Source: Perkinsus chesapeaki ATCC PRA-425
Taxonomy: Eukaryota > Protista > Perkinsozoa
Direction of reading: 5' to 3'
DNA length: 55,213 nt
Assembly (NCBI GenBank): GCA_013115145.1
Contig: JAAPAO010000194.1
Location: 1-55,213 of the forward strand
Positions 40,563 through 44,564 of the stretch are shown one piece after another (position 1 is the first letter of the stretch; the number at the start of each line of letters is the position of its first letter). The translations under genes and the position numbers were made by a program. Under the pieces are notes generated by a model, which did not search any database, was not told the DNA's origin, and saw only the letters and a list, made by a program, of their open reading frames with translations.

Positions 40563-41656
40563 TTAAACTGAGTCGCCCCCCGCCTCGGCCTTGCTCTGAT
40601 GCGAGAACACACGGAGGCCAACAAAGAAGGGGCCGAGGGACTTCAAATAATACGACGTGTGCTCGGTCTTGCGCATCTCCTCTACAATCTGTGCAACATA
40701 AGTAATAGCCAACGTGAAGTACTAAAAAGCATCCTACCTTGCTGAGGCCATAGAGGTCCTTCCCAATGAGCCCGACAACAAACTCGTTATCATCAGCATC
40801 AATACCGTAGCAGTTCAATCTTATGTCATAGGCAGCACCCACCTGCATAGCAGACGTGCCCTTACATACCCTTCAGCAGCTGTCCTACCTCAGCATAGGC
40901 TCGTCCAATGGCGGCGTGATGAAGGAGCATTCTGCACTGATCGCTGGGGGTCTCCATATAGAACTCACCCTTCCTTCGCATAGGGTACCACACAGCGTAG
41001 GGGGCATCCTGCCTAGTAGCGTTCCTTGGCACCTTTTTGAGGAGGAAGTCCCTCAGACTGGGCTCATGGCCGTTAGAGTAGGTCTTGCCCAGCATCGTCC
41101 ATCCTGGCACCGGAGATAGGACATCACCAATGCCTGCCTGTTGCAGCACTGGATTAACCACCTTGGCGAAGTGTGATGGATCGATGCTCCAAGTCAGCAA
41201 GCCGATCGATTTGGGGCTGTTAATATTATCGTAAATAACACAGGACACATCAGCAGCCTTCATCTGTTCCTCCAACTTCCTCTTAGACCCCGGCAGCCTG
41301 GCACAGTCCACAGCCTCAAGCACGTCCAGTCGGACATAAAGCCTTTCCTCAGAGGTCTGACCATTCGCACCCTTCTCATATAGGACAGGTGGAGGCACCT
41401 TAGGGAACGTCATATGACTGGTTGCTCTGCCGACGTTGCCCGTCTCCCCACCAGCCCTGGTGTAAAGGGAATTGGCGAGCCTTTGTAAGAACTTAGGCAG
41501 CTTGTTCTGACCTTCTTCATCAGTATTATGCTTGTACAGAAGCACCGCAGCACTAGCAAGGGCAACACCGCCCGCTGCCAGGAGGGTAGTGGTCTGCTTG
41601 TCGAACTTTAAAGAGAACTCCGACAGTGGTCCGGAAGGTGGTGGTGAAGTGGACAT
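40563..41656 (-). CDS. Chlorite dismutase / coproheme decarboxylase (Cld/ChdC) family heme protein with an N-terminal membrane anchor; three exons
   Basis: YAVWYPMRR, LLHHAAIGRAY (proximal His), DIRLNCYGIDADDNEFVVGL, K|IVEEMRKTEHTSYYLKSLGPFFVG; introns at 40843-40888 and 40689-40737. Confidence 0.88.
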
Positions 41657-41835
41657 GTTGAAGGAGAACTCCTCAGATAAGATAATGCTAACGGGGAACA
41701 CAAGAGCTTTAAAATGTTAAAGTCAAAGAAACGGTTATACGCACGAGGTAGCGCAGACATTAATTAGCGCCCCCCCCCCCAATCATGTGCATCGTCGTCA
41801 TTATCATCAACATGACCACTACGACACTCAAACCC

Positions 41836-41838
<3 letters not shown>

Positions 41839-41868
<30 letters not shown>
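41839..41868 (+). repeat. (CAG)10 microsatellite between the Cld-family gene and the zinc-finger gene
   Basis: Ten perfect CAG units. Confidence 0.95.
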
Positions 41869-41869
<1 letters not shown>

Positions 41870-41894
41870 TGGAGATCAATCAAATGGGAGTAGT

Positions 41895-44564
41895 TCAGAG
41901 TAGTTCACCACTACCAGTCGAAGAGGAGTCTGCTTTTGCAAATATAGGGTCACTATTAGTGAAGGCTCTCGATGGTGGAGGCTTAGATGGTGGGCCCTGC
42001 TGATGCTGTAAAGATGTAATTCCTCTTCTGGGGTACAGATCATTTCTACTAGATGGCATACGGGCAGGAGGCGGCGAAGGAGGAGGGGCATAGTTGTGGG
42101 GCGTGCCGCCATCTCTCCCAGAGTGAGGCCATGGGGACACACCACCACTCTCGGGCGAATAGTCATCGTACTGAACCGTCCTTTGATGTACGTGTTTGTG
42201 ATGGTTACGGTATTGATGACTGTTGCCTGCCGCTTGAGGGTACATCTCACCGTCACGGTATCCCTTCCCGAAGGCCGAGCTGCCCCTTCGACTGTACCGA
42301 TCATCCACCACTGGAAATGAGCCCCCATATATGTTTTGAGTTGGGGCCTCCTCGTAGGGTGGTGGTGGTGCACGAGGAGGAGGAGGAGGTATGTTCGAGC
42401 CAGCTAGGCTAATCATTGTCCCTGGGGTGGTGGAGGCGTTCTGGTAGGCATAATTGTTATGATGACGATATGTGTGATGATGATGATGATTGTAGTTGGT
42501 GGTCCGCTGTAGCGTTGGCTGCCATTGCCTGACACGACACCTCATGATCTCATCACAAGCTCAACCGTATTACCCGCCAGACCCCATCTGTCCCCCTCCA
42601 CCGTCCACTCGTGCCGCCTTAGTCGCTGCGATGCCAGCATGCGTTCTCCTTCTTGGAGAGAGTGGCAAAGGAGGGGTAAGTTCCGATGAGCTGGACTTCG
42701 ACGAGCTGCTCTCTGGCAATGGACGCTTGCTTCGGGTGCGGAACAGCAGCATAAGACAGTCCTTGCATCCATCCCCATCGAAGTGATCAGTGAAGTACCT
42801 ACAACCAATCAATGAGGAGCATAGGCCAACATAACAGCTACTACCACTACCAGCAGTTCACGGTGGCATGGGGATACCGGGAGCACTGTGAGCACTCCCC
42901 CGCATGCTGCCTGAAGGACCTGAACAACAACAGTGCTTCGTCCAACAGTTGCGAATATGACGGTCCCTACTCGCACGCATTCCGCTCTGCGTTCATTGAC
43001 TCTGCTGCCTGCCGAGACTCCTCCTCCGGCAGTGCTCTCTCTGGTGACACTACCGGCTGCTGCTTCAACCGTTCTCCTGCTAGGTACTGTTCCAGCCTAG
43101 CCTTATGTGGCCTAGCCGGTGCAGCCCAAGTAAGGCCTCCCATATAGGAGCCTTTATTCTCCCCTCCTCCTCCTCTACTACCGCTACCACCTTGCCATTC
43201 CCCCTTCGACCACATAACATTATTTTTATGCGCTTTACCACCAAGATGCTGCCTCATCGTGTCTGGATGCATACCCTTGGCCACTTTCTCACTCTGTGAG
43301 AAGCAAACATAACATATCATCTCCCATTCTGAAGGACAGTATGCGTCCCCCAGCAGCTTGCATCCAGGCCAGCCCTGCCGCACCCCAGCGTCGTACAACG
43401 CTGAAGCTCCCTCCACAGACTCCTCGTACCACTTTACCATCTGGGCCACGTGCCACTCCTTCTGGTGAGGGTCACCAGCTGGCGGCAACTCGTCCTTGTC
43501 CACAACTGTGATGGCTGCGGTATTGGCCTTGACAACAGGTACAATCACAGTACTGCTGCTGCTGTAGTTGTTGTTGTTGGGACTACCATCACCCATACAG
43601 TCTAAGCTCTTCTTATGCTCCCTACCACTAAGGTGACTATCCATCGACGGTGCTGACACCGAATGGACCACCCTCCCCCTCTGCTGGTAGCAGACCATAC
43701 AGCACATGTCCCACGTGGTGAACTTATAGTCCTCCCCCAACAGTGAGCTCCCCGGCCACCCCTGCCGTACACCATTACTGTATAGCTCCTCAGCCTTCGC
43801 TCTACTAACATCATACCACCGAACCATCTCCTTAACATGCCACTGCTTATTATGTAGATCATTCTTCCCTGGTAACCTAATGCCATCTATAAGGCCATCA
43901 TCCACAAACCCTCCCGTGCCCGCCACCTTGGGCTTAATCATCTTCGGTCGCCGTGCCACCAAGCCCTTGGCCGCCGGCTCCCTTACCATCGGATCACCAT
44001 CAAACACACTACGGCACAGCACCCCAGCAGCAACACTCCTCATTGCACCAGCGTAACCATAAGCCGACTGTGTGTGAAATCGCCACGCAGTAAGGACTTC
44101 CTGTGAAGTGAGCGCTACATCTAGCACCTTCTCTGCTGTCGGACACTCATCGTAACTGGCAGGCATCCTAAACCCATCCGGTTGGCTACGAGACGGCATC
44201 ACGACACCATCAACTGACGCTGAAGTGTCCCGCCTTTTATGCTTCCTTATAAGATGGGCCTCCACTACTGCCATCGAGCCAGGTGAGCACATGGCAAAGT
44301 CACCACAACCGAGACAAATCACTCCCCCGTCTTCAACCGCCACTATCGAGCTGCCCCAGAACCATTCATCGAAAAACTCCGGCCGCTGGTGTACCAAAAG
44401 GAACCTACCAAATTGATCCACTTAGCCATAGACAGCACTTTCGTTTACATATCTTTGCATCGCTCCAGCTGTACCTCCTTGAAGGCTTTGAGCTTGTCTT
44501 GCCTTTCGGCGTCGTTATCTTTCGTATCTTCTATTTGGGGTGCTATTGGCTTTCCAGATTCCAT
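41895..44564 (-). CDS. Zinc-finger protein with three C2H2 (U1/matrin-like) fingers in repeated modules; Pro/His-rich 3' exons probably, not certainly, belong to the same gene
   Basis: MESGK exon spliced to FLLVHQRPEFF; CLGC...HLIRKH, CMVC...HLSGREH, CYVC...HLGGKAH; downstream CSQCSRYPHATVNC and a low-complexity tail. The junction near 42970 is unresolved. Confidence 0.7.

What the first reader, a model, noticed from the sequence alone, without database searches (positions are those of the whole stretch)
40563..41656. Domesticated bacterial-type chlorite dismutase/coproheme decarboxylase gene with a membrane anchor and mixed active-site signature
Seen: a full two-domain Cld/ChdC-type protein with two spliceosomal introns (so a nuclear gene, not contamination) and an added N-terminal hydrophobic anchor (LLAAGGVALASAAVLLY). 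Established: this family is essentially prokaryotic; ChdC uses a Tyr in the YPM motif, true Cld needs a distal Arg, and both use a proximal His. My hand alignment shows the ChdC-type Tyr (WYPMRR), the His (HAAIGRAY) and an Arg (DIRLN) in the register of the Cld distal Arg (VKRKLYHSTGLDDVDF versus DIRLNCYGIDADDNEF). Inference: a horizontally acquired, organelle-tethered heme enzyme that detoxifies oxidised chlorine from host haemocytes or supports a non-canonical heme route.
Basis: partly seen in the sequence, partly recalled or inferred. Interest (0 to 1): 0.88.

Follow-up and report, generated by a model that had tools for sequence, protein, structure and literature searches.

The report
Anchored bacterial-type heme enzyme in Perkinsus
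An expressed, spliced nuclear gene of the oyster parasite Perkinsus chesapeaki encodes a membrane-anchored relative of the bacterial enzyme that turns coproheme into heme; Amoebophrya and uncultured relatives share it, so these parasites may finish heme synthesis by a route thought to be purely bacterial.

Summary
Window 40563-41656 (minus strand) is a three-exon gene. Its 332-aa product equals Perkinsus chesapeaki FOL47_003118. RNA contigs splice both introns exactly and place a spliced leader 15 nt before the ATG.

The protein is a two-domain Cld/ChdC fold behind an N-terminal transmembrane helix. It belongs to a large bacterial subfamily, found in at least 592 genomes, with an invariant ChdC-type Tyr, proximal His and a distal Asp-x-Arg. 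The "mixed signature" is therefore a family trait, not a Perkinsus invention.

In three bacterial loci this subfamily sits inside hem operons with hemE, hemY and hemH. In a fourth it follows ahbD directly. Every solved structure matched by sequence is a ChdC or a Cld-like protein, and no true chlorite dismutase is among them. I read it as a coproheme-decarboxylase-type enzyme, not a chlorite detoxifier.

The anchored form also occurs in P. marinus, P. olseni, Amoebophrya sp. A120 and uncultured compact-genome dinozoans. These form one clade (100/99) next to Myxococcota-like bacteria. The transfer is real but predates Perkinsus.

The last three heme-pathway enzymes were reported as unidentified in Amoebophrya, which makes this gene a testable candidate. 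Enzyme activity, location and the exact position of the Arg remain untested.

The parts
41672..41673 (-). trans-splice acceptor AG where a spliced leader is joined to the mRNA
   Evidence: Three cDNA contigs (X2-X4) match the window up to 41673 and then continue as the reverse complement of ..CCGTAGCCATTTTGGCTCA. The leader letters may come from a DinoSL primer, so they show the site, not the native leader sequence (PMC3101222).
41657..41671 (-). 15-nt 5' untranslated region of the mature mRNA
   Evidence: It lies between the acceptor AG and the ATG at 41656.
40889..41656 (-). exon 1, codons 1-256: N-terminal tail, membrane anchor, conserved helix, N-terminal ferredoxin-like half, and the start of the C-terminal half with Tyr224 and His247
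   Evidence: ORF and translation; RNA contigs cover it.
41534..41584 (-). codons 25-41, hydrophobic transmembrane anchor LLAAGGVALASAAVLLY
   Evidence: Kyte-Doolittle 19-residue mean 1.8. Equivalent segments (1.7-2.6) occur in 18 of 20 full-length eukaryotic homologues and in none of the bacterial ones. Helix 26-43 in the model.
41447..41500 (-). codons 53-70, conserved helix motif LPKFLQRLANSLYTRAGG found only in the eukaryotic members
   Evidence: The consensus RLAxALxxxAGG is conserved from Perkinsus to Amoebophrya. Model helix 55-67 has pLDDT above 80.
40985..40987 (-). codon Tyr224 of the WYPM motif, equivalent to the catalytic Tyr147 of Listeria ChdC
   Evidence: HMMER alignments. Invariant in 116 of 116 family rows, although the locus search pattern required it.
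40916..40918 (-). codon His247, equivalent to the proximal heme ligand His174 of Listeria ChdC
   Evidence: Invariant in 116 of 116 rows and not part of any search pattern.
40843..40888 (-). intron 1, 46 nt, GT..AG
   Evidence: Skipped in two RNA contigs of run X1.
40738..40842 (-). exon 2, codons 257-291, with the distal strand YDIRLN
40819..40827 (-). codons Asp262-Ile263-Arg264, the invariant distal Asp-x-Arg
   Evidence: Asp262 aligns to LmChdC Q187, the Cld Arg position, and Arg264 to I189. Q187 and I189 lie 5.2 and 4.3 A from the iron in 5LOQ (PMC5157759).
40689..40737 (-). intron 2, 49 nt, GT..AG
   Evidence: Skipped in the mismatch-free RNA contig of run X1.
40563..40688 (-). exon 3, codons 292-332 plus the TAA stop, with Arg297 and Thr302 (equivalents of LmChdC R220 and S225) and the GPFFVG end of the fold

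Best explanation
Shown. This is a functional nuclear gene of Perkinsus chesapeaki. It is cis-spliced twice, trans-spliced to a leader, and expressed. Its product has three parts: a short tail with one transmembrane helix (25-41), a helix found only in the eukaryotic members (53-70), and a complete two-domain Cld/ChdC alpha+beta barrel (about 86-322). It belongs to a distinct, widespread bacterial subfamily of the Chlor_dismutase family that is closer to coproheme decarboxylases (ChdC/HemQ) than to chlorite dismutases.

Well supported, if the root lies among the bacteria. The gene entered eukaryotes once, from a Myxococcota-like bacterium, before Perkinsus and Syndiniales (Amoebophrya) diverged. 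It gained the anchor and helix once. It duplicated later within Perkinsus.

Inferred mechanism. The barrel binds an iron porphyrin through His247. It holds the extra propionates of coproheme with Tyr224, Thr302, Gly251 and Arg228. It uses H2O2, activated by the distal Asp262/Arg264 pair, to form a Tyr224 radical that decarboxylates propionates 2 and 4 and yields heme b. This is ChdC chemistry with a DyP-like polar distal side in place of the Gln of Firmicutes or the His of Actinobacteria.

Speculative role. The anchor would hold this last step of heme synthesis, or a coproheme salvage step, on a membrane with the catalytic domain on the cytosolic side, next to the other late enzymes.
For: Gene, splicing and leader.

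Fold: model pLDDT 85.7. The Foldseek top 43 PDB matches are all ChdC or Cld-like proteins (LmChdC 4wws/5loq, TtCld-like 1vdh, S. coelicolor and C. diphtheriae ChdC). Nitrospira Cld first appears at rank 44. The family profile matches only ChdC or Cld-like chains in the PDB and no chlorite dismutase at E<=10.

Residue equivalences, from single-sequence and profile HMMER alignments, set against residue roles in the 5LOQ paper PMC5157759:
- Y224 = Y147 and T302 = S225, which H-bond propionate 4.
- G251 = G178, which contacts propionate 2.
- R228 = K151, which contacts propionates 6/7.
- H247 = H174, the proximal ligand.
- D262 = Q187 and R264 = I189, the two distal residues nearest the iron.
All are invariant or nearly so in 116 family rows.

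Genomic association in bacteria:
- L019: hemC/D-hemB-[this family]-hemE-hemY-hemL-hemH.
- L065: hemA-hemC/D-hemB-[this family]-hemE-x-hemH.
- L023: hemA-hemC/D-hemB-[this family]-hemE-hemY.
- L003: cobA/hemD-hemB-ahbD (TIGR04545, 527 bits, cut-off 500), then this family 4 nt downstream.
 These members carry the same eight-residue signature as P0001.

Eukaryotic distribution and single origin. The eukaryotes form one side of a branch with 100/99 support and in 100% of bootstrap trees. Their nearest neighbours are Myxococcota-type sequences.

Against: - No activity, heme binding or location has been measured.
- NCBIfam's two HemQ equivalog models score only 46 and 36 bits against cut-offs of 253 and 235, so it is not an orthologue of the characterised ChdCs.
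- Only about 6 of roughly 80 bacterial loci show tetrapyrrole genes nearby. Most contexts are unrelated (ABC transporters, Nramp, chorismate synthase), and some members are fused to aldo-keto reductases.
- A polar Asp/Arg distal side is unlike known ChdCs and could point to a different peroxide-dependent reaction on heme b.
- Perkinsus marinus is described as keeping a functional mitochondrial-cytosolic heme pathway (PMC5115734), which would make a ChdC redundant there.
- The register of Arg264 is unsettled.
- Part of the Tyr/Arg/Asp invariance among genome loci follows from the search patterns used.
Confidence: 0.5

Rival explanations
1. It is a heme b-binding, peroxide-using enzyme or heme-handling protein that is not biosynthetic. 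Examples are a membrane-bound peroxidase or catalase-like scavenger, or a heme carrier or store. The distal Asp/Arg pair would act as in DyP peroxidases, and the ChdC-like residues would be inherited but no longer used for decarboxylation.
For: - The invariant polar distal Asp262/Arg264 contrasts with the hydrophobic, base-free distal side of LmChdC (PMC5157759).
- Most bacterial loci lack heme genes, and some members are fused to aldo-keto reductases, which suggests a redox partner.
- P. marinus is reported to have a working classical heme pathway.
- The best sequence match in the PDB is the Thermus Cld-like protein 1vdh, deposited as a novel heme-binding protein and not as a ChdC.
Against: - The residues that hold the two extra propionates of coproheme (Tyr224, Thr302, Gly251) are invariant or nearly so across eukaryotes and bacteria.
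- Members with the same signature occupy the hemQ slot of complete coproporphyrin-type hem operons.
Confidence: 0.27
2. One reading: a true chlorite dismutase (ClO2- to Cl- + O2), acquired by Perkinsus to detoxify oxidised chlorine species made by oyster haemocytes.
For: - An invariant Arg lies on the heme-facing side of the distal strand.
- The fold is shared with them.
Against: - No solved chlorite dismutase matches the family profile at E<=10, and the structural ranking puts ChdCs first.
- HMMER places an Asp, not the Arg, at the Cld Arg position.
- The ChdC catalytic Tyr and propionate-binding residues are kept.
- The gene is older than Perkinsus and is shared with Amoebophrya, which infects dinoflagellates, and with uncultured relatives.
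- Bacterial members sit in heme operons, not perchlorate or chlorate clusters.
Confidence: 0.04
3. Bacterial contamination, an annotation artefact or a decaying pseudogene.
For: The family is otherwise almost entirely prokaryotic.
Against: - There are two GT..AG introns, removed in RNA, and a spliced leader at the 5' end.
- The gene lies inside a 55-kb eukaryotic contig.
- Orthologues and paralogues exist in three Perkinsus species and in a 4.8-Mb Amoebophrya scaffold, where the gene spans 3.3 kb for 555 codons.
- All pocket residues are intact.
Confidence: 0.01

Closest known systems
Coproheme decarboxylase ChdC/HemQ of Listeria monocytogenes (PDB 5LOQ, 4WWS, 6FXJ)
   Same: - Two-domain alpha+beta barrel; top structural match (Foldseek E 6e-14, TM by target 0.74).
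- YPM motif with the catalytic Tyr.
- Proximal His in an HxxxGR motif.
- A Ser/Thr and a Gly that bind propionates 4 and 2, and a basic residue at K151.
   Different: - About 21% identity, and the sequence match covers only the C-terminal half.
- Far below NCBIfam's HemQ cut-offs.
- The distal Gln187/Ile189 are replaced by an invariant Asp/Arg.
- It has an N-terminal membrane anchor and an extra helix.
- It is eukaryotic and has introns.
The unnamed bacterial subfamily annotated 'chlorite dismutase family protein' (Acidobacteriota, Myxococcota, Poribacteria, Bacteroidota MAGs and others; e.g. Polyangium jinanense P0372)
   Same: - 38-47% identity over the whole barrel.
- The same invariant signature W-Y-P-x-R-R, H, D-x-R-L, M-R-x-T and GPFF.
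- This is the family from which the gene derives.
   Different: - Bacterial members are about 235-265 aa with no hydrophobic N-terminal segment.
- Some lie in hem operons, and some are fused to aldo-keto reductases.
Thermus thermophilus Cld-like protein TT1485 (PDB 1VDH)
   Same: Best sequence match among solved structures (E 5.9e-9 with the family profile); same fold.
   Different: It has no Asp-x-Arg on the distal strand (the alignment shows m-q-v-i there) and no anchor.
Chlorite dismutase of Candidatus Nitrospira defluvii (PDB 3NN4, 4M09 and others)
   Same: Same superfamily fold, a proximal His and a distal-side Arg.
   Different: - It is found only by structure, from rank 44, at 11-13% identity, and not by sequence at E<=10.
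- The Perkinsus protein keeps the ChdC Tyr and propionate binders.
- The Arg may be shifted by two residues.
DyP-type peroxidases (same CDE superfamily)
   Same: A distal Asp plus Arg over the heme. This resemblance rests on my knowledge of DyP catalytic residues and was not tested here.
   Different: No DyP Pfam match. In DyPs the Asp and Arg come from different parts of the chain.

Membership tests
Pfam PF06778 Chlor_dismutase (Cld/ChdC family, CDE superfamily) | Score above the curated gathering cut-off | tested here: met
   59.9 bits against 25, E 3.4e-16, residues 209-317.
Pfam PF06778 Chlor_dismutase (Cld/ChdC family, CDE superfamily) | Two ferredoxin-like halves forming the alpha+beta barrel | tested here: met
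   The model has pLDDT 85.7. Foldseek aligns about 240 columns to full-length ChdC chains, with TM by target 0.66-0.78.
Coproheme decarboxylase ChdC/HemQ | Match to NCBIfam equivalog models NF008913 or NF042928 above cut-off | tested here: not met
   46.4 bits against 253 and 35.6 bits against 235. It is not an orthologue of the Firmicutes or Actinobacteria enzymes.
Coproheme decarboxylase ChdC/HemQ | Catalytic Tyr (LmChdC Y147) and proximal His (H174) | tested here: met
   Tyr224 and His247 align to them in single-sequence and profile HMMER alignments. Both are invariant.
Coproheme decarboxylase ChdC/HemQ | Residues that hold propionates 2 and 4 of coproheme (LmChdC S225, G178, Q187) | tested here: inconclusive
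   Thr302 and Gly251 are conserved, but Q187 is replaced by Asp262. No ligand-bound model is available.
Coproheme decarboxylase ChdC/HemQ | Association with hemY (CgoX) and hemH (CpfC) in a coproporphyrin-type pathway | tested here: inconclusive
   Met for bacterial subfamily members L019, L023 and L065. Absent near most others. The heme gene set of Perkinsus could not be surveyed with these tools.
Coproheme decarboxylase ChdC/HemQ | H2O2-dependent conversion of coproheme to heme b | not testable with these tools
   Needs a biochemical assay.
Functional chlorite dismutase | Catalytic distal Arg at the position of NdCld R173 | tested here: inconclusive
HMMER puts Asp262 at the equivalent LmChdC Q187 position and Arg264 two residues later.
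Functional chlorite dismutase | Sequence similarity to characterised chlorite dismutases | tested here: not met
   No Cld chain appears among PDB matches of the family profile at E<=10. The structural match comes only from rank 44, at 11-13% identity.
Functional chlorite dismutase | Chlorite to chloride plus O2 activity | not testable with these tools
   Needs a biochemical assay.
Horizontally acquired eukaryotic gene | Eukaryotic copies nested in bacterial diversity, restricted eukaryotic distribution, and eukaryotic gene structure | tested here: met
   The eukaryotic clade has 100/99 support and sits next to Myxococcota-type sequences. The only named eukaryotes are Perkinsus and Amoebophrya. 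Introns and a spliced leader are present. The direction of transfer rests on rooting among bacteria; rooting with HemQ was unreliable.

The most novel reading that the evidence does not exclude
Early-branching dinozoan parasites (Perkinsus, Syndiniales such as Amoebophrya, and uncultured relatives) complete heme synthesis through a coproheme intermediate. They would use this membrane-anchored, bacterially derived ChdC. That would be the first coproporphyrin-dependent terminal step in eukaryotes, and it would account for at least one of the three late heme enzymes that could not be found in Amoebophrya.
Probability: 0.33. Interest if true: 0.85.

Novelty: new variant of a known kind. Interest (0 to 1): 0.72.

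Why it matters
Reviews state that all eukaryotes make heme by the protoporphyrin route and that the coproporphyrin route, whose signature enzyme is ChdC, is bacterial (PMC10740692).

Here a ChdC-type gene is fixed, expressed and anchored to a membrane in a group of eukaryotic parasites. In one of them, Amoebophrya, the last three heme enzymes were reported as unidentified (PMC6482013). That turns an open gap in parasite metabolism into a direct experiment.

If the enzyme is essential, it has no counterpart in the molluscan host. It could then be a selective target in Perkinsus, an important shellfish pathogen.

The finding also points to a large bacterial ChdC-like clade with a distal Asp/Arg. 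This may be a third way of activating peroxide in this enzyme family.

Tried and rejected
1. Neighbour analysis. I clustered 423 ORFs around 76 bacterial loci and found no universally conserved partner. The largest cluster covers 7 loci. The top clusters are ABC-2 transporters, DUF4340, Nramp, chorismate synthase, PAS/GAF, AAA and amidase. The heme link therefore rests on a minority of loci, found by tblastn with the L003 heme genes.

2. Rooting. Rooting the family tree with two actinobacterial HemQ sequences from plasmids gave a 5-substitution-per-site branch that attached among the eukaryotes. I treat this as long-branch attraction and used the unrooted tree instead.

3. Fusion proteins as function clues. 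Aldo-keto reductase fusions are real and recurrent. The MoaA-like radical-SAM 'fusions' P0247 and P0249 are fragmentary and may be read-through calls.

4. Literature. No paper in the held library mentions chlorite dismutase together with Perkinsus or dinoflagellates. The ChdC phylogeny paper (PMC5993186) and three papers on the Perkinsus heme pathway or plastid are not held. I could not check whether this bacterial clade has a published clade name, or which late heme enzymes Perkinsus has.

5. A second copy. None is in the window. Neighbours of the P. olseni tandem pair are unrelated to heme.

6. Earlier scan notes. None bear on this gene.

7. The Arg position. I could not superpose the model on 5LOQ or 3NN4 because model coordinates are not exposed.
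Full report
**1. The observation**

The minus strand of window 40563-41656 carries a three-exon gene.
- ATG at 41656.
- Exon 1: 41656-40889, 256 codons.
- Intron 1: 46 nt, GT..AG, 40888-40843.
- Exon 2: 40842-40738, 35 codons.
- Intron 2: 49 nt, GT..AG, 40737-40689.
- Exon 3: 40688-40563, ending in TAA.

A search with exon 1 returned a 332-aa protein, P0001, at 100% identity. It is named hypothetical protein FOL47_003118 of Perkinsus chesapeaki, and its sequence equals my splice model.

Public RNA data confirm the model. A 270-nt contig with no mismatch, from an RNA run of the same organism label, joins 40688 to 40738 and 40840 to 40887. These are the two introns, with the usual 2-4 nt ambiguity.

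Three contigs from 454 RT-PCR cDNA libraries match the window up to 41673. They then continue as the reverse complement of ..CCGTAGCCATTTTGGCTCA, a dinoflagellate-type spliced leader, joined at the genomic AG at 41673/41672. This leaves a 15-nt 5' UTR, so the ATG at 41656 is the first in the mRNA and the N-terminal extension is translated.

The leader letters match canonical DinoSL and not the P. marinus variants ACCGTAGCCATCTTGGCTCAAG (PMC3101222). They may therefore be primer-derived. They mark the trans-splice site, not the native leader.

**2. What the protein is**

Pfam's Chlor_dismutase model matches at 59.9 bits against a cut-off of 25, over the C-terminal half only. NCBIfam's two HemQ equivalog models reach only 46 and 36 bits against cut-offs of 253 and 235. 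It is a family member, but not an orthologue of the characterised enzymes.

An AlphaFold model built on a 30-sequence family alignment is confident (pLDDT 85.7, pTM 0.78). It shows a low-confidence N-terminal helix 26-43, helices 55-67 and 72-80, and then two ferredoxin-like halves.

Foldseek against the PDB ranks coproheme decarboxylases and Cld-like proteins first. These are Listeria 4wws/5loq/6fxj, Thermus 1vdh, Streptomyces 9miq, Geobacillus 5t2k, Thermoplasma 3dtz and Corynebacterium 6xub. Nitrospira chlorite dismutase first appears at rank 44, with 11-13% identity. By sequence, the family profile finds only ChdC or Cld-like chains and no chlorite dismutase, even at E<=10.

**3. The active-site signature is a family trait**

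In the 30-sequence alignment, eukaryotic and bacterial members share invariant W223, Y224, P225, R228, H247, G251, D262, R264, R297 and others. In a 116-row alignment, H247, G251 (115 of 116), R297 and T302 (114 of 116) were not part of any search pattern and are equally conserved.

The single-sequence and profile HMMER alignments to Listeria ChdC agree:
- Y224 = Y147
- M226 = M149
- R228 = K151
- H247 = H174
- G251 = G178
- D262 = Q187
- R264 = I189
- R297 = R220
- T302 = S225

The numbering checks out against the residues named in the 5LOQ paper (PMC5157759). That paper states the following.
- H174 is the proximal ligand.
- Y147, M149 and S225 H-bond propionate 4.
- G178, V185 and Q187 H-bond propionate 2.
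- K151 and R133 hold propionates 6 and 7.

The Perkinsus protein therefore keeps the ChdC catalytic Tyr and the binders of the extra propionates. It replaces the apolar distal side with an invariant Asp-x-Arg.

HMMER splits the four extra residues into two 2-residue gaps and places Asp262 there, with Arg264 one inward-facing step further along. The two registers differ by an even shift on strand 261-266 of the model. Arg264 faces the heme in both. I could not settle which is right without model coordinates.

**4. Who else has it**

The family is very common in bacteria. They are mostly Acidobacteriota, Myxococcota and Poribacteria, with Bacteroidota, Planctomycetota, Methylomirabilota and others. 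The protein atlas likewise points to Myxococcota.

The anchored, roughly 300-aa form is eukaryotic.
- P. marinus has three entries and P. olseni a tandem pair.
- Amoebophrya sp. A120 has CAD7954210, 555 aa. The gene spans 3.3 kb on a 4.8-Mb scaffold.
- About 25 unnamed clusters come from metagenomes and Logan assemblies.

Three of the unnamed ones lie on gene-dense contigs with eukaryotic genes such as EMP24, WD40, RRM, Mob1 and topoisomerase III. The order topoisomerase III ... Cld-like ... alpha/beta-hydrolase is conserved. A quick, single-gene topoisomerase III tree places these organisms as a clade (99) sister (98) to Amoebophrya plus core dinoflagellates, inside Myzozoa. They are deep dinozoans, possibly perkinsids.

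All full-length eukaryotic members but two have a hydrophobic segment (KD 1.7-2.6), mostly with a more positive C-terminal flank. It is followed by the motif RLAxALxxxAGG. No bacterial member has either feature.

A profile built only from eukaryotic members found no named apicomplexan, chromerid, ciliate or core dinoflagellate sequence. It showed a score gap, 356 to 306 bits, between eukaryotic and bacterial hits. An exhaustive HMMER pass over 1.84 billion representatives found 361 clusters at E<=0.001.

**5. Origin**

In an unrooted careful tree (76 rows, 253 columns), the 23 eukaryotic rows form one side of a branch with 100/99 support and in every bootstrap tree. Rooted on Poribacteria, the placement is as follows.
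- The sister group (100/99) is a set of four bacterial sequences. One is a Myxococcota MAG protein. Another is a 73%-GC contig labelled Rickettsiales.
- This sits inside a Myxococcota-rich clade (99/94).
- The next clade out (100/95) contains the hem-operon members.

Rooting with actinobacterial HemQ failed, because the branch was 5 substitutions per site. The direction of transfer therefore rests on parsimony: more than 12 bacterial phyla against one narrow eukaryotic group.

Within eukaryotes, an Amoebophrya-type clade and a Perkinsus-plus-compact-genome clade mirror the expected species relations. Perkinsus has two paralogue groups. The simplest history is a single gain before the Perkinsus/Syndiniales split, a single gain of the anchor, and later loss in core dinoflagellates.

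**6. Function**

The strongest clue is bacterial gene order.
- L019 (Bacteroidota MAG): hemC/D, hemB, this family, hemE, a HemY-type amine oxidase, hemL, ferrochelatase.
- L065 (Anaerolineae): hemA, hemC/D, hemB, this family, hemE, one small ORF, ferrochelatase.
- L023: as L019, up to hemY.

UroD, a HemY-type oxidase, a ferrochelatase and a Cld-family protein, with no coproporphyrinogen decarboxylase, make up the coproporphyrin-dependent terminal set.

In L003 the gene starts 4 nt after ahbD, the oxygen-independent coproheme decarboxylase (TIGR04545, 527 bits, above the cut-off). That gene is itself preceded by cobA/hemD and hemB. Two Poribacteria loci have an AhbD-like radical SAM gene 2 kb upstream. 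These members share the eight-residue signature of P0001 and are 38-43% identical to it.

Most loci have unrelated neighbours, however. Some members are fused to aldo-keto reductases.

I therefore commit to coproheme-decarboxylase-type chemistry as the most likely activity, at about 50%. A non-biosynthetic peroxide-using heme protein is the main rival, at about 27%. Chlorite dismutation is unlikely, at about 4%.

**7. Cellular role**

Reviews place the protoporphyrin route in all eukaryotes (PMC10740692). P. marinus is described as keeping the heterotrophic mitochondrial-cytosolic pathway (PMC5115734). [quoted passage not shown]

For Syndiniales and Perkinsus, a later survey discusses only ALAS, HemB, HemC and HemE, plus HemD for MALV-II (PMC10624901). 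A bacterially derived, anchored ChdC in exactly these lineages is a concrete candidate for part of that gap.

The anchor has moderate hydrophobicity, no presequence and a positive C-flank. This would leave the catalytic domain on the cytosolic face of an ER or mitochondrial outer-membrane type anchor. That is an inference from charge bias only.

**8. Verdict**

The haemocyte chlorine-detoxification idea and the Perkinsus-specific timing do not.

No paper in the held library links this family to Perkinsus or dinoflagellates. I rate it a new variant of a known kind, with high but conditional interest.

Noticed in passing
window 40590-40980 (RNA run X1, record 1): A second RNA contig from the same organism label is about 90% identical to the gene. 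It shares intron 1 but differs around intron 2, where it skips 63 nt with 14 other letters in between. It is probably an expressed paralogue or divergent allele that is not in this window.
   Followed up: partly
window 41771-41780 and 41838-41870: A run of ten C, then an 11-unit CAG repeat, lie just upstream of the gene. The repeat falls in an ORF reading poly-Gln on the plus strand. The next minus-strand ORF (41895-42545) is Pro/His-rich and low in complexity.
   Followed up: no
L091:12651-13690 (P. olseni FOZ60_004099, P0007): The tandem second copy in P. olseni, as annotated, lacks the stretch that holds the WYPMRR motif. This is either a mis-predicted intron or a paralogue that has lost the catalytic Tyr.
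   Followed up: no
L001, L002, L089 (Logan contigs) and contigs of P0009/P0045 and P0331/P0054: An uncultured, nearly intron-free, very gene-dense dinozoan lineage has intergenic spacers of about 50 nt and GC of about 50%. The order EMP24-DHODH-prenyltransferase-topoisomerase III-...-Cld-like-...-hydrolase is conserved across members whose topoisomerase III proteins are only 57-92% identical. The organism is unidentified.
   Followed up: partly
L062:4750-6654, L071:4852-6693; P0165, P0176: There are recurrent fusions of an N-terminal aldo-keto reductase domain to this Cld-like domain in Latescibacterota, Omnitrophota and unnamed bacteria. This suggests a built-in redox partner.
   Followed up: partly
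L003:6804-8756: ahbD (heme b synthase, above the equivalog cut-off) and the Cld-like gene are separated by 4 nt in a Deltaproteobacteria MAG. This may pair an oxygen-independent and a peroxide-dependent enzyme for the same step.
   Followed up: partly
L032 (CAYQEG010000020.1) and L069: Contigs labelled 'uncultured Rickettsiales' carry close relatives of the eukaryotic clade, and L032 has 73% GC. The taxonomic label of these bins looks wrong, so the true sister lineage is uncertain.
   Followed up: no
L013, L021, L012 and relatives (Vicinamibacterales): An Nramp-type metal transporter gene lies directly downstream of the Cld-like gene in five Acidobacteriota loci. In L006 and four further loci, a chorismate synthase gene lies directly downstream instead.
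   Followed up: no
P0001 residues 190-198 (window about 41063-41089): The loop GKTYSNGHE between the two halves is nearly invariant in eukaryotes. His197 is fixed in eukaryotes but is Tyr, Arg, His or Phe in bacteria. From my recollection of the ChdC literature, not checked here, it may correspond to the flexible inter-domain loop that carries the distal His of actinobacterial ChdC.
   Followed up: no
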